A stretch of DNA of 63,987 bases, counting the filler, from Reticulomyxa filosa (Eukaryota > Protista > Foraminifera), in NCBI GenBank assembly GCA_000512085.1. It is 23 parts of 23 records of this genome, joined end to end, with 100 filler letters (N's around TTAATTAATTAA, not from the genome) between each part and the next. Parts side by side here need not be neighbours in the genome. Positions count along the whole stretch, not along the records: positions 16,673 to 26,516 come from ASPP01024385.1; 22 more parts are not named here. One strand, written 5' to 3'. A model generated the notes under the pieces. The model made no database searches and had not been told where the DNA came from. It saw only the letters and a list, made by a program, of their open reading frames with translations. Every line of letters begins with the position of its first letter. Position 1 is the stretch's first letter. Below are positions 4,025 through 33,767 of the stretch, piece by piece. The position numbers were made by a program, and so were the translations under genes.

Positions 4025-5226
4025 TTTTTTTTGATTTAAACGGGCAAAAAGGGAAACTTCGTGGAACTATGGACTTCCCTACACAATTACAAAAACTCGC
4101 CATGTAATTAAAAATGATGTTTTTTGTAGACATAAACAAAATAAAATCTAAACAAAATTGGAAAGTGGTACTGATATACGGTTCACGAACTTTGTGATGG
4201 ATCAACACCTACAAGCAAATCTAATAGATAACTTTGCAGATTTTGATTTGGTCAAAAATGTGTGTTACAAACGGAGAATTAAATTATTTTTGGAGGATGA
4301 AAGTATATACGTTCTGTCAATCTAAAATTTGTAAAAGCATGATATCCAATAGAAGCACCCAAAAAACAAATACATATTAACTGTTAAAGTCCCAAAATAT
4401 TTAGAAAGAAAAGATTGAAAATTGTCGTTGATTTAAAAAATGAAAGGTGGAGGGCATGTGAGTATACAACCAAAAGACGGTTCGTAGATCACAACTAAAA
4501 GTGGGCAATGTCTGTTTGTTCCAAAAAAAAGAAAGAGCGCTTGTTGTAACCACCCACAAGACAAAAATAAAATAATATAACAATAATAATAGTAGTCACA
4601 TGTATTTTATATGAGCATGTGAAGGGAAAAGGAGGACGGACGGAAAAAAAACAAAACAGAACAAAATCAAAGACAAGGTCAAAAAGGTAATTTTTCACAA
4701 CGACAAAAAAAACAAATGAAAGAAAAAAAAGCAAATAAACAAATCACAAAAATGCTTAATTCCCACTAAACACACACCGATACAAAGAAGAAAAACCAGA
4801 TAAAATAATGACCCGACAAAAAAAGCAACAAGAAAACACGTAAAAAATAGAACTCGACTCAATCAAAGTGAAGAAGGACTGGACAAATACCACAGTAAAC
4901 TTCACATAAAACCAATTTGTTAAAATGTTTTTAATCCAAAGCAAATCAAAAACAAAAGTACAAAATAACTAGTAAAATAATTTATTTTTTTTAACAAACT
5001 TTTTTTGTTTGTGTTTTTTTTTATACGTATTTATATAATAAAAATGACTTTTTTCAGTTCGGACCTCATACATCATTACTCTCTTCACTATTTTGATTGC
5101 CAGATGCCTATGATGATATTTTTGTTTTTTTTGAAATATCGTGGTTTCGACTTCTCCATCAGATTGCCTTCAGGTTATAGAATATGAAAAAAAAAAATTA
5201 TGTCAAATTAAAAAAAAAAAAAAGGA

Positions 5227-15171: not shown

Positions 15172-17189
15172 NNNNNNNNNNNNNNNNNNNNNNNNNNNNN
15201 NNNNNNNNNNNNNNNTTAATTAATTAANNNNNNNNNNNNNNNNNNNNNNNNNNNNNNNNNNNNNNNNNNNNTTTTTTTTTTTTTGCTGTATCATGGATAC
15301 CACTTTTTTTTTTTTATACATCACAAAATTTTTTTAATAAAAGGTGTGGTAAAAATATATCAAATGTACTCGCAACGTATAAATAGTTTTATGTCACTAT
15401 GCATATAGGACATAAAATACAAATCATACATGAAATAGTTATTCATTGAACCATCCAATACCTCACGTGACTCCGGCTCGTCGATTGAATAGTTCACGAT
15501 TATACTCCAAGTCAATGACAAACATAATTTTAAATCGGTCCCCGGTGATTAATGCTTTTTTTTTTTTAATACAGTTGAAAAAAAAAATACAATTCAATTT
15601 ATTTAGGACGTTCAACATTTTAAATCTTACCCCTTTATCTCTCTATCTCTATCTTCTACTCCCTCCCTAATCCTTTCTTCTTGTGCAATACATGATGACC
15701 TTCTTCATCATATGTAATAACCATATTTCGACGGTCCCTACTACTTATAAGACGTATACACACTTGTAGAGCATCCAAACGGTCAAATTTATGTCTTGGT
15801 TTGCAGTGATTGTATTTGATGTCGTTGAGTGGTCGTTTCTCCAAATTATCTAACAGATGGATTATTGTTACCACTTGCGAATATGCGTCTGTGATCTCTT
15901 CAATGAACATGTTTTGACTCGCCAGGTGTGCGTTTATCCAACCCATGTCTCTTTCGTGGTTGTGTGTGATAATCCTCTATCTTTTTCTCCAATGTATAAT
16001 TTGCATTGAGCCATTCGCTGTTCAAGAGTTTTGAAAATAATTTAAACAACTTACAAAAAATTCAACGCATGCAATCTCAGTATACAAATACACGCACTTG
16101 ATTACAAAAAACATGTATCTAAAATTAGATCTTATTGCATTTGACATTTTTTTTACAGAAAAATAAAGATCATTTGAAACAACAGTCTGAAATTTTGAAA
16201 AAAAGTATTAGTATTTCTTATGATTTTTACAATTTTTGTCAAGAAATAAGACTAATGAACAAGTACAAAAAGCATTGACTGTAGAACAAAAAAGTTGTAT
16301 TGATAGTAATTTTTCAAAAGTAAAATTGCAAATAATTTCGTTCCAATTGAAAAAATAATTGAAAATTAAAAAAAAAGTGAAAATTCATATAAGATAAGGG
16401 AGCAAGACAATAATAATTACAATATTGATTCTTATCTGCACACATTCTTTTGTTGGCTATTTTCATTTAAACAACTTTTTACAGAATCCATTTGTGTCAT
16501 CATTTTAAAAAATTTGCAATATGAAATTGAAAATTTATAACATTAACATTATTTGATTCTATATTTTTTTTTNNNNNNNNNNNNNNNNNNNNNNNNNNNN
16601 NNNNNNNNNNNNNNNNTTAATTAATTAANNNNNNNNNNNNNNNNNNNNNNNNNNNNNNNNNNNNNNNNNNNNGAAATTGCATTTGACAGAAGATGATCAA
16701 ATGCCAACAAGTCAAATTATTTTTTACCAACTAGTTTTTTTCTTTCCTCAAGGATCATTTCAATTTCATATTTTAGGAATTGAGATAAACTTTGTTTATC
16801 CTCTTTGGAAAGATAAAAGGGCTCTGTAGGCAAGCTTCAATTGTTTTTTTCTTTTTCATTTCGCAAGACAGCAAATGAAAACGTGCTTTGTTTGATGAAA
16901 TTTTGTTATGTTGGACTACACTGAGCGTAGCTTTTTTTTTGGCACTCCAGTCAAATCTCGTGGCAAAATGTTTAGTGAAAATACTATTGTTTTTTTCAAG
17001 TGACTATTGACGCTCAATGCAAGCGACGTAAAAAAATGAATGAGTAGAAGTCAATTGATCTGGTCGACTCCGAGGAGAATTGGGCATGTGACAGATTTGA
17101 AGAGCTGTCAATGCCACTTTGGTGTTTCAGCTTTCATTGATATGTTGCAAGCGAAGAACATGATGTCTTTTGGAGAATTTAGCACCTGA

Positions 17190-17420
17190 GCTCAAGGTAT
17201 TATCGACGTCATGTGGTATAATAAAAATATATTGCCGTCATTGTGTCCATGATTATTTGCACACTTAATGAGGTTGACGCTGTCCATGAGCACATCAAAT
17301 TCATCATACACATAAAACAGAGACTGTCTAAAGTTTTGCAGCGACATTATCGCCGCTGCCGTTTCTTGTGGATGTATCATCTGTTCTCCTAAAGCAAGCA
17401 ATGAATAAGATATACATTAT
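17190..17420 (-). pseudogene. SMC5/6-type ATPase C-terminal fragment
   Basis: LLALGE...FYVYDEFDVLMDSVN resembles the SMC6 Walker B/D-loop (DEFDVFMD.VN). An out-of-frame IIPHDV-like H-switch region follows. The fragment is isolated and degraded. Confidence 0.55.
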
Positions 17421-18703
17421 ATATTATATTTTAGTAATTCTTTTGGAAAAACAAAAATAAAATAACAATGTATTTCTGCTTGTAATGCTTGTTTGATCTG
17501 TTCACACTGTAACTTCTTGGATTATCAGTCAATTTACAGTTATACTTAATTAAGACCATTACAGTCCATTAAAATTGATTGCAGTCCAACTCTGTACCAC
17601 GTCAAGCTTTTTTCACCGGAATTTCACCCATGGTTTACAATTCATTTGTATATATAGTCCCAGATTGGTTTTGTAACTTCGAATTTTTCAAATTTGTATC
17701 TTTTTTTTTATAAACCCTGAATTGGTTTGGACGCTTAAGTTCTATTTTTTATTTTTAATCTTTGAAATTAGTAGTCATTTTTGTTAGATTTTGATATGAC
17801 CCAATAATTTTCTTTCTAATTTGAAAACACAATTTAACAGCCAGGTTTTTTTTTACAGTGTTTGGAAAAAAATAAAAAGAAGATAAAAAAAGACAAAAGC
17901 AAAAAGAAAATATTTGTTCCAGGCGGCGCCAATGGGCACCGCCTGGATTAAATTTTTCTTTTTCAACTTTTTTTTTAGTTATTTTATGTTATCTAAAGGC
18001 CTATTTTTTTGAATTTATATACATTAGCACTTTCTTTGCTAAATATAACCAGACCTTTTGTAAGTGCAAGCTATTTGTTCGGAAAATTGTGTAAAGTGCT
18101 ATTTTTATTTAATGCAAAAAATATATCCTCTCCAACCAAAAGTTATTAAAACAGCTCCAATAAATTGGATATCTCTCAATTTTTTAGTGAAACAAAGCAA
18201 ATAGTGCAAAGGAAATTTAAAGTTCAATAGTTATGAAACAATTTTTATTGTCTTGCTTCTTATGGATACAACAGCAAAGACAGGCATAGATAGAAACAAG
18301 AACGAATTGCTGTGTAGATTTCTAGCTTGCTTTATTTTGTTCTCCATAAAGAGACAGTATTTAAGTATAATTTCAAAAAAATCAACAAATCAAGTTTTTT
18401 CAATATTTCTTAATTGTCAAAAATTTGAATCTTTTGCTAATTTTTGAAAATGTTTGGGAAAAAGTAACAGTCTTGCGTAAGGTGTTTTCAAAAAATATTC
18501 CACTAAATTTTGGAATAATTTTTTCAAAAACAAAAAATTTTACTAAACGAATATCTTTATGAAATGCCGTTTTATGTTTCAACTTTTTTTTGCGTTTCAC
18601 TGTATTTTGGACTATTTGCTCCTTATATTAACAAATAAACTAACTCATCAGAAACAAATACTCAAAATAAATTTTATTCACAAGCAAACAAAAATTAACA
18701 AAA

Positions 18704-21700
18704 TCAAAATTTTCCTCCGCGTTGTTCCACAAGCAATTTCTGTTGAAATATTAAACCATTTACATTTTTCCAAATACTGCTTTTCATCGCTAATCCAAGA
18801 CTTTGAGCACGCACTTGCCAAATACATTTCACTAAACTCGTTGCATTTACATCAATTATTTTACAATTCTCACTGCCCCACAGTCGAATTGCACTATCCT
18901 CTGAACATGATACCAGCTTCGAACCGTCAGGTGATAAATGTATTCCGTTAATATCCCCTTCGTGTCCTTCTAATGTTAGAATTTGCCGTCCGGAAGATAC
19001 GTCCCATAATCGAATAGTTTTGTCGGTTGAATAAGAAATAATTTTAGAACCATCTGGCGTAAATTGAACGCGCTTTATCATATCTGAGTGGCCTGATAGC
19101 AGTCGAATTTGTTGACCGGACGATGAGTCCCACAATCGAATCGTTTTATCCTGTGAGCCAGATAGTATTTTGGAACCATCTGGAGAAAATTGCACCTCGG
19201 ATATATATCCTGAATGTCCTTTCAGTAATAGAAGCTGCTTCCCAGATAATACATCCCACAATCGAATTGTTCTATCTTGCGAACACGACACAATTTTAGA
19301 TTGATCTGGTGAAAATTGAGCTGCAGATACATGAATTGAATGTCCTTTAAATATTCGGAGCTGTTTGCCGGACAACACATCCCATAACCGAAGCGTGTTA
19401 TCATCTGAACAAGACACAAGTTTTGATGCATCAGCTGAAAATTGGATCCGTAAAACTGGACAGGAATGTCCATCTAGCAAATGAAGTTGTTCTCCTGATG
19501 ATATGTCCCATATTCGAATGGTATTATCACTTGAACATGATACAAGTTTGTGACAGTCTGGTGAAAATTGTATGTCGTTGACAGTATCAGAATGTCCTTC
19601 CAGAACTTGGAGTTGTTTTCCAGAAGATACATCCCATATTCGAATTGTAAAGTCTATTGCAAAAGATACAATTTTGGAGCCATCGAATGAAAATTTTGCT
19701 CCATTCACGCCATCTGTATGTCCTTCTAACACTTTACTTTGTCTTCCCGATCGTACATCCCACAACCGAAGCTTTTCATCTAATGCACATGATACAACTT
19801 TGGAGCCATCTGGTGAAAATTGCACACCCGTTACACTTGCTGAGTGTCCTTCTGATAAGTGGATTTTTCTTTCTAAAACTGAGTCCCATATTCGAATTGT
19901 TCCATCCCATGAGCATGATAAAATTTTCGGATCGTTTGGAAAAAATTCTACTCCATACACACCATCTGAATGTCCTTCTAACTTCTGAACTTGTTTTCCG
20001 GATGATACATCCCATATTCGAATTGTTCTATCAGATGAGCCTGATACAACCCTGGAGCCATCAGTAGAAAATTGTGCTGTCCTGACAACGGTTGAGTGTC
20101 CTTCTAATACTTGAAGTTGTTCTCCAGACAATAAATCCCATATTCGCAATGTTGCATCAGTTGAATATGACACAATACTTAAACCATCTGAAGATATTTG
20201 AATTCCCTGTATAGCATTTGAATGTCCTTCCAATATTTGGCTTTGTTGACCCAAAGACAAATCCCATATTCGAAGAGTTGTATCATCGGAATATGATATA
20301 ATCTTTGATCCATTGGATATAAATCGCACACCCTTTACCTCTTCTAAATGTCCTTCTAAGATTTGAATTTGTTTCCCAGAAGATACATCCCAAATTCTGA
20401 TTGTTTTGTCATCTGAGCATGAAACAATCTTGGAGCCATCTGGTGAAAATTCTACTGCATTCACAGCTGCTGTATGCTCTTTCAATAAGTGTATTTGTTT
20501 TCCAGAAGATACATCCCATATTCGGATTGTTTTATCCTCCGAACATGATACAACTTTAGAGTTATCTGGTGAAAATTGTACTGCAGCTACAGGCTCTGAA
20601 TGTTCTTCCCAGATTTGAATTTGTTTACCTGATAATGCGTCCCACAATCGTACTGTTTTATCTTCTGAACATGACACAACTTTGGAATCGTCATGTGAAA
20701 ATTGCGCTATATTTACATTATCTGAATGGCCTTTCAATAAATGAATTTGTGCTTCTGATGATGTGTCCCATATACGAATACTATTATCCCGTGAGCATGA
20801 CAAAATTTTTGTTCCATCTGATGAAAAGGAATTTTGTTTACTGCATTTGAATGACCTTTTAAGTATGCATATTCTCCAAAGTATACACCATTCATTGATG
20901 CATTTGTAAAGTTTGTATTGTTTAAGCAACTTTGATAAAAACGAACATTATCCAAATTAGCATTACTAAAGTTAGTTCCTTCAAGGAATGCACGATCTAA
21001 AATTGCGTGAGGAATTTTGATATTGTTCCAATTTCGATAATGCATATTTACGTTTGCTGAATTGAGTATGGTAATAGCATTCGCCGCTGCAATACTAACA
21101 TATCCATTATTTTTTGATGCTTCAATAATTCTAAATAATCTCGATTTTAAATTTACAAATATTGGACTATTGTCATGAACTCTCTCTGCAATAAATTGAA
21201 TAATTCCTAATTCTTCATTCAATAATTTATAATTGATAGATAATTTTTGGATGTGCATTTCAAATTGTTGTTGAAATTGTTGATTATTAACACCAACGAC
21301 ACTGGGCTTCCATGAAATAATTTCAAATATGGTTTTTTGTGCTGCGTAATATTCTTGACAAGATTTATGTAAAAATTGATATTTATTTTCGCCAATCCTT
21401 CTTAATACATATTTTGCAATACTGTCACCATTGAAGTATTTTTCCCAAACATCTTGTGTCTTTGCAATTGAAGATTCAGCTTTTTCATTGGTTGTTTTTA
21501 TTTCTATTTTTTCATCTACAATACTTTTAGTTTCATCTTCTTCTGTTATTGGATCTAATTTACTCCAAATTTCATTATTGTTTTCAGGTTGAAATTCTGG
21601 TTCAACTGCAACTTGAGTTCCTTGGAAAAACATTTCAAATCCCAAATCAAGACAATATTGTTTAAATGTTGATTTTATTTTATTGATACTTGATTGAATT

Positions 21701-24045
21701 CGTAATTCGGATAATTTAGAAGTTATATTTTGAATATGGATGTCAATCCAATGATCATTAAATACTTCATATACTTGTGCTTTCGAGATATTAGCATCTG
21801 CGCCATATTGTTGTACTAATGATGGCAATACAGTTAAAATAAGTTGAAGAAGAAATGGTTCTTCCACCATTTTTTGCAAATTTGAATAATTTTTCAATGT
21901 TTCTTCATATTTTTTGGGCGTCCAATCATTTTCATCATTCTTTTTTTTATATTTCGATTTCATTTTTGCAAATTTTTCAATGTAGCTATGCATTTGTAGT
22001 TTTGTAAATGGCCATAAATACATCATTTCTGTTATGTTTTGAGTTTGATTTGCGCCAATTAAAACTTGTTTAATATCGTCATCACGTAATACTTTACTTC
22101 TACAAGTGACAATAACTTTTGCATTCCATTGGTTCAAATTGAAACGGTCATAAAAATATTGTTCATGACTATCACTTTTACGATAAAAATCAAATATTTC
22201 GTCAAATCCATCCATAATAAATACAAATGAAATTTTTTCGCGAATTGCGTCCATAATATCTTTGCTAATATGTTTGCCTTGCAATGCTTGCAAGATAATA
22301 TCTTTTTCATTTTTTTTATTATAACTTTTTGCAAATGAGATATAAACGGGAATTGGATTTTTTTTTGGATCAGAAACATAATTGTTCCATAGCGATTCTT
22401 CCAAATGACGACAAAATATACTTTTTCCTGATCCTGATTTTCCTTGAATTATCATTAGTTTTCTTTGTTGTAATGACGGCTGTTCGCTTTGCTTTTTTTC
22501 TTCTTCTTTTTCTTCTAAAAATTCAATGACATGTTGATGACAATCATATGTTTCCTGATCTTCGTCGTCATCACCATCCACATGTGGATAGTTATTTGCT
22601 TGTAATGGAATATATGTTTCAAGTGCTTGAGCTATAGCGATATCTTCTTCCATTTCCTGTTTTCTTGATTCTTGTAATAATAATGCAAAATCAACACAAC
22701 TTGCTGGATTTTTATCTCCAATGATGTATTTTTTGTAATATTCATATAAAACCACATGAATTGCTTTTCCCTTTACTTTCTCTGGAACAAACGTACAAAG
22801 TTGTTTATATACAAATTGTGCAATATTCAAAGATACACTATTATTAATTTCTAATTCTGTTTTCTTAAACAATTGTGATGGCTTTAATATTCCAATATCT
22901 AAATGAGATTTGTAGCGATTTGCAATTTTTTGTATTGCCTTATCATCAACCCATTCACAAATAATATCATTAATTTTTGTTAATGTTTCGTCACTTGCTT
23001 GCTTCAGATCTTCTTCTCCTTGATTTTTTGGTCCCCATGCTCTGATATGTTCATAAAACAAATGACTTAATTTTGGATTTTCAATGACAGTATATCCTTC
23101 CAGAGTTGTAAAATTCTTCAATGTTGCTTGCATTTCCACAAATACATCATGCTTTGGAACAAACAATTTAATATTGTGAAATCTGTGATGTGTTTTCGAC
23201 TGTCTGTCAAAGAAATCTTTATCTTCAGATACAATCAAATTGAATTTTTCTGCTTTCTTCATTACTGCCACTGCTGTTTGTAATTTAGTTGCATTATCAC
23301 ATAAAATCGTAAATCTTCCAACATCAAATACTTGATTATAGTCACCTTTATAATCACATTGAATCTTTTCCAATAATCTTACCTTATCTTTCACTTTTGG
23401 TGGTTTCACCACAGTTATTAAATATTTCTGCAACTCTGCCACCAAGTTGATGATCTCATTGCTTACCATCGCATTTTCACTGCGACCAATCAAATCTTCC
23501 AGACTTGTCGCATGTTGTCTGATCTTTTCAGCTTTCAATGTATATGTCAATCCTGCCTTTATTGCGTAAAAGCATTGATAGTGATTTTCTTTCACAGGCA
23601 CCGTACCATCATTTGCACAAATGGAATGTTCGGAATTGAAAAATAATACCTTTTTAATGGAGGTAACTGTGGATTGTCCACAATCTGGACAACGATAGGA
23701 TGTCTTATCTGAAGTGAATGAAACACTACCAAAACCAATATGTACCCATACTGGGAGCTTCGCTTTTGCTGCCAGACAGTCTTCATTTACGCAATAACCT
23801 TGCAGGTTAATACCTGGTTTTGTTTCCCCAACTTCCGCTTTTTCCTCTTCTTTTTGTAATTTGTCTGATTTTTGTCTGCTTCTCCGCTCTTTTCTATTCC
23901 TTGATTGTCTATTGCTTTTTTTTTTTTTACAGATATATGAAACAAGGTCATATGCAAATATGACAGGAAAAATAGCAATAGTGAGGAAACCAAATGATAT
24001 GCAATTGTCAACCTGATCATCTTTAGTTTCTGTTTGTCCTTCCAT
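18704..24045 (-). CDS. NLR/STAND-like protein: Cys4 Zn-binding domain + RelA/SpoT-like nucleotidyltransferase + NACHT + pentapeptide repeats + 16 WD40 repeats; split by one frameshift near 20830
   Basis: Walker A IIQGKSGSGKS, Walker B FIMDGFDE, sensor VIVTCRS, EEPFLL, winged-helix YQFLHKSCQEYYAA. Pentapeptides ILDRA-FLEGT-NFSNA-NLDNV. 16 WD40 units. C-terminal GL..QKLLVEQRGG tail. ORFs 20734-24045 and 18704-20929 join in the first WD repeat (GHSNAVNKI/..FSSDGTK). Confidence 0.9.
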
Positions 24046-24839
24046 TTTGTTCTTTGATACAGATGTTGTGCGTAGATTGTCAAGGCTACGAAAAAACGAA
24101 AAATAACTTCTAAGTTAGGTTGTATTCCAAATACAACTAAAACAAGAAAAGATATGTAATTTTTTTACCGGTTGAATAAATATTAGCAAAAAAAAAATGT
24201 AGACCGGCCTCAATAGTTTGTGGAGAGTTTTTTCTTTGATATCTTTTGACTTGCTTACTAAACTGATGTTTGAAAAAATTTCGATTTGATATTACCAGTC
24301 CAAATATAAAGGGAATTTAAATGAAGTCAAGAGACATACGCAATATTTTTTCAAAGTAAAATGAAAAATGAAAAATGTGCGACAATGCAGCTTCCATGTT
24401 CCCGTTTGGCAGCTGATCTTGCAGATGGCAATCTTCCATTTCCAGCAGCTACAAACATCAAGAGAAAAAAACCGAAATAGGCACTGACACTGAAGGAAAA
24501 AAAAATTCTTTTCGAAAAGCGACATATATATATTTTTTTTTTTAGTTTCAGAAAAAAAAAGTCAAACTTAAAAAACTCTTGGGCTCTCCAACAAATTTGT
24601 TGATATTGGTAGTATTCGGCAATCTTTGCTGTAATTTCAGAAGCTTGTCTACCAAAAATAAAATAATCCAAGCACAAAATGGTGTGAAAAAGTGTGTACT
24701 CCGATCGTCCTCTCCCCACTCATTTCCCCTTGGTGTGAGAGACGAAAAAGAAGAAGAAAGGGGGGGGGGGGAGAGAAGGGAGAGATGAAAACATGTACAA
24801 CTTGTATATGAGACGGGTGGGAATATATGCGAACAATGT

Positions 24840-25356
24840 GTGTATGTGGGAAACAAAAACCAGCGACCAAAGGGAGGAGCAAAGCGCCGTGGGACGGGTG
24901 GGGAAGGCCAAAAGCGAGCCAAGCCAGCGAAGCCTCCAAGAAAGGCATCAATGAACGGAGCCGAGATAAGTAGTAGCAATAACATCAGTAATGGCAATGG
25001 CAATAATAATAATAATAACAATGACAAAAAGATACGAGCGTCGCCATCGTCGCTGATTGTGACGAACAAGTCGAATGTGGCATTGCATACATATCAGCCG
25101 GCAAGCCTGCCCTCGTCTCTGCGCGCGAGCGAGACGAATGAGCGCATCCCTGCAACAGTGGGTGCACCGATTGCAATGGCGAGCGGGCCTATGCTCATGC
25201 ATAGTGAGAAACCAAAAAAGGGGATTACAATGAACGGACGAACATCCACGTCGTTATCGTCGTCATCCTCGTCGTCGTCGTCGTCCTCGTTGTCGTCATC
25301 GCCATCTCCGAATAAGAACGAAGGAGACACAGTGCATGATGATAATAATAACAACG

Positions 25357-25387
<31 letters not shown>

Positions 25388-26470
25388 GAATGAAGATGAG
25401 GATGAAGAAGGGGATATTATGGGGATGGTATATACGGTGGCGGTCAATTCGAAGAAGCAGGACAATAGCAATAGCATGGTGATATCTCGCAAGCTAAGTC
25501 AAAGCAAGACCAGGCCCGCATTGGAGGTGGACTCACGTTCGAACGGAGGTCATTACGACGAAGAAGACGATAATGACGATGATAATGACGATAGTGATGC
25601 CAAGGTTGAACATGTACATACCAAAAATCAGAAACAAAAGGATTTGTATCAGGTGACGTTCAAAACGCAAGTGCTAGGCATCGAGATCGTGCCTTATCGT
25701 CGCGACGAAAAGATCGGGGCCGTCGTGGTGAGCAATCGACACTCGAGCAAAGCGGCCAAGCAGGTGGTGCCCTACTCGTACATCACCAGCGTCAACGACG
25801 TCATCGTCGCCGACTGGGACCACCACGCCATTTTGCAGCTGCTCAAATACGACCCCAAAAAAAAAATCGACCACTTACTATCACCTTCCACAAGCCATCT
25901 GTCGTCTATCCCCGTTCCTTCTTTTCCGACGAAGACAACAACAACAACAACAACAACGACTCTAAAAAAGTTATCTCTTCTGCTTTTGCTTCTGCTTCTG
26001 CTGTTGCTACTGTTGTTCCTCCTCATTCGCATCATAATTTTAATCCCTCACAGAAATGCACGCATGTCAATTGTCAGAAGAAACCTGTCTCTTCTACAAC
26101 GACAGACTCGCAAGTGCAAGTGACTAAACAGGTGCCGTCGCCGGATACTTTGCTTGCTACGATCATCCGCAACAGCAACGAGGACGGGAAGAAGCACCAG
26201 TCGCTCGAGGAACTGAAACTGCTGTACGACGAGAAACTCAAAGTGGTGCATCAACACTATCGCCAACTCTATCATATCCACGCGGACACGCTCTCGTTTC
26301 AAACCATCCTTCACGACGCCGTCACCGACAAGGCCCAACAGCTCGCCGCGCTCTGCAAGGAAAACCTCCTGCTCATGGCCAAACTCACTCTCTGCGAACA
26401 AATGACACACTCCTTGCAACTTCACTGCTTTCAAGTCAATCAGCGCTTGCGAGACAAAATCAACCAATTG
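24840..26470 (+). CDS. Low-complexity protein with a PDZ-like domain and a C-terminal coiled coil (partial; homopolymer frameshift near 25860)
   Basis: LYQVTFKTQVLGIEI...YITSVNDVIVADWDHHAILQLLK, then after the A-run in another frame RPLTITF, which completes a PDZ-like fold. That frame is continuous with ORF 26114-26470. Confidence 0.6.
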
Positions 26471-26473
26471 TTA

Positions 26474-26516
<43 letters not shown>

Positions 26517-33427: not shown

Positions 33428-33767
33428 TATTATGAACGAATTCGAGCATGGAAACCTAATAATTAAATGGAAGAGGAATTAACACAAGCAAGTAACGAAA
33501 TATTGACAAAGATTAATGATATAATCTGTGAATGGATTGACGAAAAGGAAATTTAAAAAAAATTGCAAATCGATCTAAACCACATTCAGAAATTTGTATA
33601 TTAAAACCTCCACAATTGAAGAAATAAACGAAGAACAAATTAATTCTCAAAAAGATATTTTATTAAAATTAATTAAATTTGTATGTAATCAACTTTGTAA
33701 ATTCAATCCAAAGGAAATGAAAGGCAAGAATATTTATGTGATTTTATTTGAATTTTTAAGAAACACA
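33428..33767 (+). pseudogene. Decayed paralogue of the 18704-24045 NLR-like gene (end of NTase domain and linker)
   Basis: YYERIRAWKPNN*MEEELTQASNEILTKINDIICEWIDEKEI*...FVCNQLCKFNPKEMKGKNIYVILFEF aligns with FYEHIRAWGPKNQGEEDLKQASDETLTKINDIICEWVDDKAIQ...FVYKQLCTFVPEKVKGKAIHVVLYEY. Confidence 0.9.

What the first reader, a model, noticed from the sequence alone, without database searches (positions are those of the whole stretch)
23035..23412. NLR-like receptor with a RelA/SpoT-like nucleotidyltransferase effector: candidate protist immune or signalling system
Seen in sequence: N-terminal to the NACHT, residues about 212-337 read KPPKVKDKVRLLEKIQCDYKGDYNQVFDVGRFTILCD...DKDFFDRQSKTHHRFHNIKLFVPKHDVFVEMQATL...SHLFYEHIR. 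Established: RelA/SpoT-type synthetase folds have, in order, a basic K...R..EK motif, D..R/G, a YR/H strand, ExQ and a downstream His helix. All appear here with plausible spacing, including the catalytic D and ExQ. RelA_SpoT domains are known N-terminal effectors of some fungal NLRs, and toxSAS enzymes make (pp)pApp or pyrophosphorylate tRNA. Inference: ligand binding by the WD40s triggers NACHT oligomerisation and switches on a nucleotide-messenger or toxic transferase. A paralogue remnant at 33428-33767 shows this is a gene family. I know of no description of such a system in Rhizaria.
Basis: partly seen in the sequence, partly recalled or inferred. Interest (0 to 1): 0.9.

Follow-up and report, generated by a model that had tools for sequence, protein, structure and literature searches.

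The report
Amoeba immune-receptor family carrying alarmone-toxin enzyme
A giant freshwater amoeba (Reticulomyxa filosa) has about 60 immune-receptor-like genes, each carrying an enzyme domain most like bacterial toxins that turn ATP into the alarm molecule (p)ppApp, and the module seems to have crossed between bacteria and this amoeba lineage.

Summary
Observation confirmed. The piece is a Reticulomyxa filosa contig. Residues ~175-366 of the minus-strand gene fold as a RelA/SpoT (RSH) synthetase. Best match is the (p)ppApp toxin Tas1/Apk1 (Foldseek E 1e-7; clade profile E 1e-24, next RSH 5e-11). Gene order: Cys/Zn domain, RSH, NACHT, pentapeptide, 16 WD40 repeats. This copy has a one-base frameshift before the WD40s; a paralogue is intact over 1773 codons in eukaryotic context. 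About 60 paralogues keep K219, K227, D241, R244, E304 and Q306 invariant. The RSH core is the best-conserved part (dN/dS 0.14, one pair), while WD40 surface positions are hypervariable. ATP-donor motifs are Apk-type. The acceptor-base motif is altered (GYRD/GYSG becomes HHRF), so the product is uncertain. Nearest relatives are signal-peptide-bearing RSH-NACHT proteins of bacteria that look like endosymbionts (a related NACHT carrier is Bacteroidota). One has the same Zn-RSH-NACHT cassette beside recA, so the module crossed domains; direction is unproven. RelA_SpoT-NACHT-WD40 is already annotated in fungi, and alarmone synthetase effectors in bacterial NACHTs, so this is a new variant of a known kind. 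No activity or expression is shown.

The parts
23530..23814 (-). Cys-rich, all-beta putative Zn-binding domain (aa 78-172; GxNLxGxC...C...CPxC)
   Evidence: Cys invariant or nearly so in A4; all-beta at pLDDT ~94; ESM Atlas nearest clusters eukaryotic (rotifer, 0.94), weaker hits ubiquitin-fused; function unknown
22948..23523 (-). RSH synthetase domain, Tas1/Apk-like (aa 175-366; the finding's core is 23035-23412)
23365..23391 (-). syn1 motif K219-x3-R223-x3-K227 (Tas1 type, ATP phosphate binding inferred)
   Evidence: K219 and K227 in 59/59, R223 in 58/59 paralogues; all three invariant in the diverse alignment A3; Tas1 alignment
23308..23325 (-). syn2 motif D241-V-G-R244-F-T (Apk-type R-x-T; Mg-binding Asp inferred)
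   Evidence: D241 and R244 in 59/59; Apk signature RYT vs RSH AVR (PMC12226406)
23173..23190 (-). syn3 motif H286-H287-R288-F289-H290-N291 (acceptor-base site; Tyr->His and Gly/Asp->Phe; Asn as in Apk GxN)
   Evidence: H 51, Y 7, D 1 at position 287; Tas1 reads GYSGVN; GYRD in distant relatives
23122..23136 (-). syn4 motif E304-M-Q306-A-T (catalytic Glu inferred; lacks the RSH-type Arg)
   Evidence: E304 and Q306 in 59/59
23041..23064 (-). C-terminal helix H328-x2-Y331-E-x2-R335 (HxxYExxR of the Tas1 clade)
22606..22947 (-). Helical linker between RSH and NACHT (aa 367-480)
   Evidence: helical in the model; column identity 0.72
21970..22458 (-). NACHT NTPase (aa 530-692) with intact Walker A (GKSGSGKS) and Walker B (DGFDE)
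   Evidence: Pfam NACHT 33.9 bits, above cut-off; K541, S542, D612, D615, E616 conserved
21076..21969 (-). NACHT-associated region, presumed HD1/WHD/HD2 (aa 693-990)
   Evidence: position and homology to bacterial and Mortierella NACHT-WD40 proteins; not folded here
20872..21054 (-). Pentapeptide repeats (aa 998-1058)
   Evidence: Pfam
20824..20832 (-). One-base frameshift inside the first WD40 repeat, at a T run (assembly error or real lesion, undecided)
   Evidence: three-frame reading; 23 paralogue models are continuous here; NCBI model P0002 bridges it with a gap
18860..20870 (-). 16 WD40 repeats of 42 aa (presumed sensor); stop codon at 18704-18706
   Evidence: hypervariable positions across 359 family repeats; same C-terminus as intact paralogue L092
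23909..24012 (-). Probable intron read through by the ORF (the hydrophobic aa 12-45 are probably not a TM helix); true N-terminus unresolved
   Evidence: GT...poly-A...AG layout like the paralogue L092 intron; splicing at the obvious AG gives a stop, so the 5' end may also be damaged (worked out by hand from the sequence)
24370..24448 (-). Possible upstream exon with a UBA/CUE-like motif (NGNMEAALSHIF)
   Evidence: by eye; a paralogue N-terminus gives a weak Pfam CUE hit, E 9.5e-4; tentative

Best explanation
This is one member of a large foraminiferan family of NLR-like STAND receptors whose built-in effector is a Tas1/Apk-type pyrophosphokinase. Shown: fold, clade, conserved catalytic residues, purifying selection, intact NACHT motifs, diversified WD40 surface, nuclear location of a paralogue, and an intact full-length paralogue. 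Inferred: the WD40 propellers hold NACHT off until a non-self or modified-self ligand binds. NACHT then exchanges nucleotide and oligomerises, releasing the RSH domain. The domain transfers pyrophosphate from ATP to the 3'-OH of an adenosine nucleotide, giving (p)ppApp, which drains ATP and shuts down or kills the affected part of the syncytial cell, or acts as a messenger. The His-for-Tyr change probably slows the enzyme. The RSH-NACHT module was most likely taken from secreted effectors of intracellular bacteria and then multiplied. This particular copy may be a decaying one.
For: Tas1 is the top hit by sequence, by clade profile (E 1.2e-24 vs 5e-11 for the next RSH) and by Foldseek. Apk signatures at syn1, syn2 (RFT) and syn3 (Asn), and no RSH Arg at syn4. 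Eight residues invariant across a 29%-identity alignment are all kept. 6 of 7 candidate catalytic residues are invariant in 59 paralogues, p 1.7e-4. The RSH core is the most conserved region, 0.87 vs 0.75 for NACHT, with dN/dS 0.14. Three WD40 positions reach 3.4-4.0 bits of entropy. L092 has a 1773-codon intact frame next to MRG and disintegrin/WW genes. FaRel Y175A still makes ppApp and is toxic (PMC7229694); I take Y175 to be the syn3 Tyr from my own knowledge. Trees: RSH nests among bacterial NACHT-linked rows; AU tests reject eukaryote monophyly, p 1.6e-4; the NACHT groups with bacterial secreted NACHT-WD40 proteins, SH-aLRT 100.
Against: No biochemistry and no expression data (no sequencing run was listed). 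Syn3 is HHRF, with Tyr and the small residue both changed, and syn4 lacks the Apk His. VIA scores SAS2, Tas1, Rel and SAS1 as tied. Syn motifs alone did not set specificity in swap experiments (PMC12226406), and SaEAS, the second Foldseek hit, makes both alarmones (PMC12691689). This copy is frameshifted. No cognate hydrolase or immunity protein was looked for genome-wide. The deeper tree nodes are only moderately supported, the root is by midpoint, and the AU groups were named after seeing a tree.
Confidence: 0.5

Rival explanations
1. An active NACHT-gated pyrophosphokinase with a changed acceptor: (p)ppGpp, the tRNA 3'-CCA end, or another nucleotide or cofactor. The conserved HHRF loop would be a re-tooled pocket.
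For: The ATP-donor residues are invariant while the acceptor loop differs from every characterised RSH, yet it is itself strongly conserved (H286, R288 invariant) and shared with the bacterial relative P0083. CapRel scores Z 11.4. Specificity is not readable from motifs (PMC12226406).
Against: The closest characterised enzymes (Apk1, Apk2) are adenosine-specific (PMC10083569, PMC12226406). Guanosine signatures AVR, SxH and IR are all absent. tRNA-targeting toxSAS are more distant (Foldseek rank 24; not listed at E<=10 with the clade profile).
Confidence: 0.27
2. The domain no longer turns over and serves as a nucleotide-binding regulator or an integrated decoy (for instance for bacterial immunity proteins or effectors), with signalling done by another part such as the Zn or CUE-like N-terminus.
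For: Loss of the near-universal syn3 Tyr and a bulky Phe beside it. Dozens of constitutively present ATP-draining enzymes would be risky. One paralogue has a tandem duplicate with a further degenerate loop (P0001).
Against: Every Mg/ATP-binding and catalytic residue is invariant in 59 copies. A decoy would be expected to diversify, yet this is the slowest-evolving part.
Confidence: 0.13
3. An active enzyme in a non-immune role (stress or nutrient signalling, self/non-self control of network fusion, or managing symbionts and prey), with the NLR-like layout incidental.
For: No infection data exist. Paralogue P0059 joins Zn-RSH to an extracellular repeat region plus a transmembrane helix without NACHT, so the domain is also used in another receptor type.
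Against: Lineage-specific expansion, hypervariable repeat surface and broken copies are the usual marks of conflict genes (established for fungal NLRs, PMC4986451).
Confidence: 0.08
4. The genes are bacterial symbiont sequence mis-assembled into the R. filosa genome.
For: The closest outside relatives are bacterial.
Against: About 60 divergent copies. Spliceosomal-type introns and eukaryotic neighbours (L092). A eukaryote-type low-complexity gene lies in this same piece. AT-rich, poly-T-intron relatives occur in two independent metagenomes (L005, L006).
Confidence: 0.02

Closest known systems
Tas1/Apk1 (P. aeruginosa T6SS effector, PDB 6ox6) and MuF-fused Apk2 (p)ppApp synthetases
   Same: RSH fold; KxxxRxxxK, YKGD, DxxRxT, syn3 Asn, ExQ, HxxYExxR; best hit by sequence, profile and Foldseek
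   Different: Eukaryotic nuclear gene; internal domain before a NACHT, not a C-terminal toxin tip; no PAAR or MuF; no adjacent immunity gene seen; syn3 HHRF instead of GYSG; about 20% identity
Fungal RelA_SpoT-NACHT-WD40/ANK NLRs (Dyrka 2014, PMC4986451; PMC12258605)
   Same: Same three-part architecture; proposed direct enzymatic effector
   Different: Rare in fungi (<1% of annotations) but the shared effector of about 60 genes here; no hit that I could identify among the 78 profile matches was fungal (most were unnamed); ppGpp was assumed for fungi and nothing tested; extra Zn domain and pentapeptide repeats here
Bacterial NACHT/NLR-related anti-phage proteins (Kibby et al., bioRxiv 10.1101/2022.07.19.500537)
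   Same: Alarmone synthetases are listed among NACHT effectors; repeated transfer of NACHTs from endosymbionts to eukaryotes is proposed
   Different: Reticulomyxa, Rhizaria and foraminifera are not mentioned in the text; no PADLOC match; the bacterial relatives here carry signal peptides, so they look host-directed, not anti-phage
Mortierella/Mycoavidus NACHT-pentapeptide-WD40 family
   Same: NACHT-pentapeptide-WD40 backbone, host expansion mirrored in an endosymbiont
   Different: Separate NACHT clade, 25-28% identity; no RSH domain detected
tRNA-pyrophosphorylating toxSAS (CapRel, FaRel2) and housekeeping SAS (RelP/RelQ)
   Same: Fold, catalytic Asp and Glu; CapRel is also a fused sensor-toxin
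   Different: Lower sequence and profile scores; the guanosine-type signatures AVR, SxH and IR are absent

Membership tests
RSH synthetase superfamily (PF04607) | Pol-beta-like RSH SYNTH fold | tested here: met
RSH synthetase superfamily (PF04607) | Pfam gathering score 27 | tested here: inconclusive
   21.2 bits for this copy; 30.2 for paralogue P0001, which has two copies
RSH synthetase superfamily (PF04607) | syn1 Lys/Arg, syn2 Asp, syn4 ExQ | tested here: met
RSH synthetase superfamily (PF04607) | syn3 Tyr stacking on the acceptor base | tested here: not met
   His287 here and in 51 of 59 copies; Tyr in 7
RSH synthetase superfamily (PF04607) | ATP-dependent 3'-pyrophosphoryl transfer | not testable with these tools
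   needs enzymology
Apk1/Apk2 (p)ppApp synthetases | syn2 R-Y/x-T | tested here: met
   RFT
Apk1/Apk2 (p)ppApp synthetases | syn3 GxN | tested here: inconclusive
   FxN: Asn kept, Gly replaced by Phe
Apk1/Apk2 (p)ppApp synthetases | syn4 YH (rather than IR) | tested here: not met
   AT; Tas1 itself reads VN
Apk1/Apk2 (p)ppApp synthetases | N-terminal PAAR or MuF delivery domain and adjacent immunity gene | tested here: not met
   so Apk-like, not an Apk1/Apk2 member
NLR-like STAND receptor | NACHT with intact Walker A and B | tested here: met
NLR-like STAND receptor | N-terminal effector plus C-terminal repeat sensor in one polypeptide | tested here: met
   met for the family (L092 intact frame; 36 models with all three parts); this copy is frameshifted
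NLR-like STAND receptor | Lineage-specific expansion and variable sensor surface | tested here: met
NLR-like STAND receptor | Ligand-triggered oligomerisation and immune output | not testable with these tools
   inference only
Fungal RelA_SpoT NLRs | Common descent of the RSH-NACHT fusion | not tested
   no fungal RelA_SpoT NLR sequence was recovered for a direct comparison
cGAS/CD-NTase (SMODS) | Best structural match to cGAS-like NTases | tested here: not met
   Z 8.3 or less vs 11-13 for RSH

The most novel reading that the evidence does not exclude
Foraminifera captured a secreted NACHT-gated (p)ppApp-type toxin from intracellular bacteria and made it the output of a ~60-gene innate-immune receptor family. 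That would be a nuclear-encoded, non-plastid eukaryotic immune pathway whose effector is an alarmone pyrophosphokinase making (p)ppApp or, through the HHRF pocket, an undescribed pyrophosphorylated product.
Probability: 0.4. Interest if true: 0.85.

Novelty: new variant of a known kind. Interest (0 to 1): 0.64.

Why it matters
In the papers read here, RSH synthetases are known from bacteria, phages and plastids, plus untested annotations on a few fungal NLRs. A conserved, expanded family in a plastid-free protist gives a direct way to test whether eukaryotic cytosols make (p)ppApp-type nucleotides and whether NLRs can use an alarmone enzyme as their death or signal output. It also adds a case, with close extant bacterial relatives sharing the multi-domain cassette, for the idea that eukaryotic NLRs come from symbiont effectors. 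Foraminiferan immunity is essentially undescribed in the literature searched.

Tried and rejected
cGAS/SMODS or generic NTase: rejected on structure. Canonical (p)ppGpp SAS: the signatures are absent. Contaminating symbiont DNA: rejected (introns, eukaryotic neighbours). An N-terminal TM helix: probably intron read-through. Programmed frameshift: not supported, since paralogues are continuous. Searches that found nothing: HHRF-type relatives in GTDB genomes, JGI metagenome contigs and IMG/VR, phages and plasmids, PADLOC. The RecA beside P0083 gave no close genome (58-63% to many phyla), so that bacterium is unassigned. The Tas1 paper was not held. Literature searches found no paper with Reticulomyxa plus NACHT, or with Reticulomyxa plus STAND and effector domain; the genome paper is probably not in the library. 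The Zn domain has no convincing solved-structure match (Z under 6 within a multi-domain model; not searched alone).

Full report
Origin and gene. The piece (16673-26516, 9844 bp) matches a Reticulomyxa filosa contig: NCBI protein P0002 is 100% identical over the query region and sits on a contig of the same length. On the minus strand an ORF of 1103 codons (24045-20734) is followed in another frame by a WD40 ORF ending at 18704. The order is: a Cys-rich domain (aa 78-172), the domain in question (aa ~175-366), a helical linker, NACHT (530-692, Pfam 33.9 bits), pentapeptide repeats and 16 WD40 repeats of 42 aa. The two ORFs are one gene broken by a one-base frameshift at about 20824-20832, inside the first WD40 repeat at a T run; 23 paralogue models are continuous there. 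Paralogue L092 has one uninterrupted frame of 1773 codons from the Cys domain to the same C-terminus, with GT-AG introns at its 5' end and MRG and disintegrin/WW genes beside it. The architecture is therefore real and nuclear. Whether this copy is broken in the cell or only in the assembly is unknown, because no sequencing run was listed. The hydrophobic aa 12-45 are probably intron read-through.

The domain is an RSH synthetase of the Tas1 clade. Pfam RelA_SpoT matches at E 3.6e-4, below the cut-off, and paralogue P0001 passes it. Tas1 is the best PDB sequence hit (E 0.015) and the only hit of the paralogue profile. The AlphaFold model (pLDDT 84) gives Foldseek hits to Tas1 (E 9.6e-8), then SaEAS, RelP and RelQ. 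VIA gives Z 11-13 for the top seven RSH chains and 8.3 or less for cGAS-like enzymes. A profile search of 1.8 billion proteins returned foraminiferan copies and then a clade with the pattern KxxxRxxEKxxxDYxGD, DxxR, GYRD, ExQ, HxxYE, fused to eCIS-core, phage MuF, TPR, ankyrin or DUF285 domains, including Guillardia and Triparma proteins. A profile of that clade hits Tas1 at E 1.2e-24 and the next RSH at 5e-11.

Active site. PMC12226406 gives signatures separating adenosine (Apk) from guanosine enzymes: syn2 RYT vs AVR, syn3 GxN vs SxH, syn4 YH vs IR. This protein has the Tas1-type syn1 (K219, R223, K227), syn2 D241-x-x-RFT, syn3 with Asn291, and syn4 E304-x-Q306-AT. None of the guanosine signatures is present. 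All eight residues invariant across a 29%-identity alignment are retained. In 59 near-complete paralogous domains K219, K227, D241, R244, E304 and Q306 are invariant and R223 is kept in 58; only 24 of 126 columns are invariant, p 1.7e-4. The RSH core is the most conserved part of the protein (0.87 vs 0.75 for NACHT and 0.72 for the linker), with dN/dS 0.14 against L092 (one pair, dS near 0.8). The departure is syn3: GYRD/GYSG becomes HHRF, with His in 51 and Tyr in 7 copies. The bacterial relatives show a series TTHYRD, THYRF, THHRF. A FaRel Tyr-to-Ala mutant still makes ppApp and is toxic (PMC7229694; that this is the same Tyr is my own knowledge), so an attenuated or re-tooled enzyme is more likely than a dead one. 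Motifs alone do not fix specificity.

Family and sensor. Seventy R. filosa proteins match. Of these, 61 have the D...ExQ core, 56 also have Walker A and 36 also have five or more WD40 repeats; many of the models are partial. Across 359 repeats three positions stand out, at 4.0, 3.4 and 3.9 bits. From my own knowledge these are the top-face ligand hot spots (R1-2, R1, D-1), as in fungal HNWD receptors. Related Cys-RSH genes occur in AT-rich eukaryote-like contigs from two metagenomes (L005, chimeric with bacterial DNA; L006) and in L004, so the family is not confined to one genome. The Cys domain's nearest Atlas clusters are eukaryotic (rotifers, 0.94; weaker ones ubiquitin-fused). Several paralogues have a CUE-like N-terminus (weak).

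Bacterial link. P0083 lies in a gene that begins with a signal-peptide-like stretch just downstream of a bacterial recA. It matches aa 62-559 (Cys domain, RSH with the same HHRF, start of NACHT) at 36% and has two in-frame stops (L002/L003). P0120 is signal peptide-ankyrin-RSH-NACHT among transposases. P0108 is signal peptide-RSH-TPR followed by an ankyrin-NACHT ORF. The nearest NACHT relatives found are NACHT-pentapeptide-WD40 proteins P0144-P0148 (32-34%, vs 25-28% for Mortierella and Mycoavidus), several with signal peptides. One lies beside era, der and dnaG on a contig whose Der is Bacteroidota. The NACHT tree groups R. filosa with these at SH-aLRT 100. The RSH tree is a ladder of P0108, P0120/P0110, P0083, L004, then foraminifera (supports 82/49, 83/75, 99/99, 86/91; midpoint root; eight distant or redundant rows of A3 left out). 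AU tests reject both eukaryote monophyly (p 1.6e-4) and monophyly of the four bacterial rows (p 0.009), with groups named after seeing a tree. At least one cross-domain transfer follows. Bacterium to foraminiferan is the simplest reading, but the eukaryote-type Cys domain in L002 allows a transfer back. That these bacteria are endosymbionts is inference from their repeat-rich secreted proteins and transposases, by analogy with Amoebophilus (PMC3482391). The recA host could not be named.

Mechanism. Most likely (0.5): WD40 ligand binding activates NACHT, which releases an ATP pyrophosphokinase making (p)ppApp, depleting ATP or signalling in the affected part of the syncytium. Rivals are another acceptor (0.27), a non-catalytic sensor or decoy (0.13), a non-immune role (0.08) and contamination (0.02). 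Every step after fold, conservation and architecture is inferred.

Comparison and novelty. RelA_SpoT-NACHT-WD40 is annotated in fungi as a rare class with assumed ppGpp synthesis (PMC4986451; PMC12258605). Alarmone synthetases are listed among bacterial NACHT effectors, along with the endosymbiont-donor idea (10.1101/2022.07.19.500537). No held paper links Reticulomyxa with NACHT. The protein works like a fungal-type enzymatic NLR with an Apk-like effector. It is not an Apk1/Apk2 member (no PAAR or MuF, altered syn3 and syn4). What is new is the Apk clade of the effector, its scale in one protist, the altered pocket and the close bacterial cassette. Verdict: new variant of a known kind, interest 0.64.

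Noticed in passing
L091:4946-7999 (P0059): R. filosa paralogue in which Zn-RSH is the intracellular tail of a single-pass membrane protein with an extracellular repeat region and no NACHT: a receptor-type alarmone synthetase candidate.
   Followed up: partly
P0001 residues 118-338 and 500-719: Paralogue with a tandem duplication of Zn-RSH; the first copy has a more degenerate syn3 loop.
   Followed up: partly
N-termini of P0011, P0015, P0042, P0046, P0055: Many paralogues begin with a GGMQ motif (like a ubiquitin-fusion junction) followed by a CUE/UBA-like helical domain, hinting at ubiquitin-linked control.
   Followed up: partly
window 24840-26516 (+): Eukaryotic gene with Asn/Ser/Asp low-complexity tracts and a PDZ-like segment near 25650-25850, divergent from the NLR-like gene; cut by the contig end.
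   Followed up: no
window 17192-17401 (-): Short ORF with a Walker-B-like YDEFDVLMD motif resembling SMC5/6 C-terminal heads; possibly an exon or remnant.
   Followed up: no
P0129 (Guillardia theta), P0135 (Triparma laevis), P0115/P0123 (DUF285 fusions), P0125/P0138 (TPR fusions); Atlas clusters in diatoms and Nucleocytoviricota: Tas1-like RSH domains with GYRD-like motifs occur in other eukaryotes and giant viruses, often doubled or TPR-fused; apparently an undescribed eukaryotic spread of this clade.
   Followed up: partly
L087 and L089 (ENA ERZ26692640): A Bacteroidota contig and a plasmid-like contig from one sample carry near-paralogous giant NACHT-WD40 genes among tandem WD40 and TPR effector-like genes and transposases.
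   Followed up: partly
L005 near 4624-4659: Public contig ERZ25039517 contig_125688 is chimeric: ~30% GC eukaryote-like DNA joined abruptly to ~59% GC bacterial DNA.
   Followed up: yes
P0002 (NCBI model of this gene): The model bridges the frameshift with an apparent false intron, drops a few residues near aa 845 and adds a spurious C-terminal extension.
   Followed up: partly
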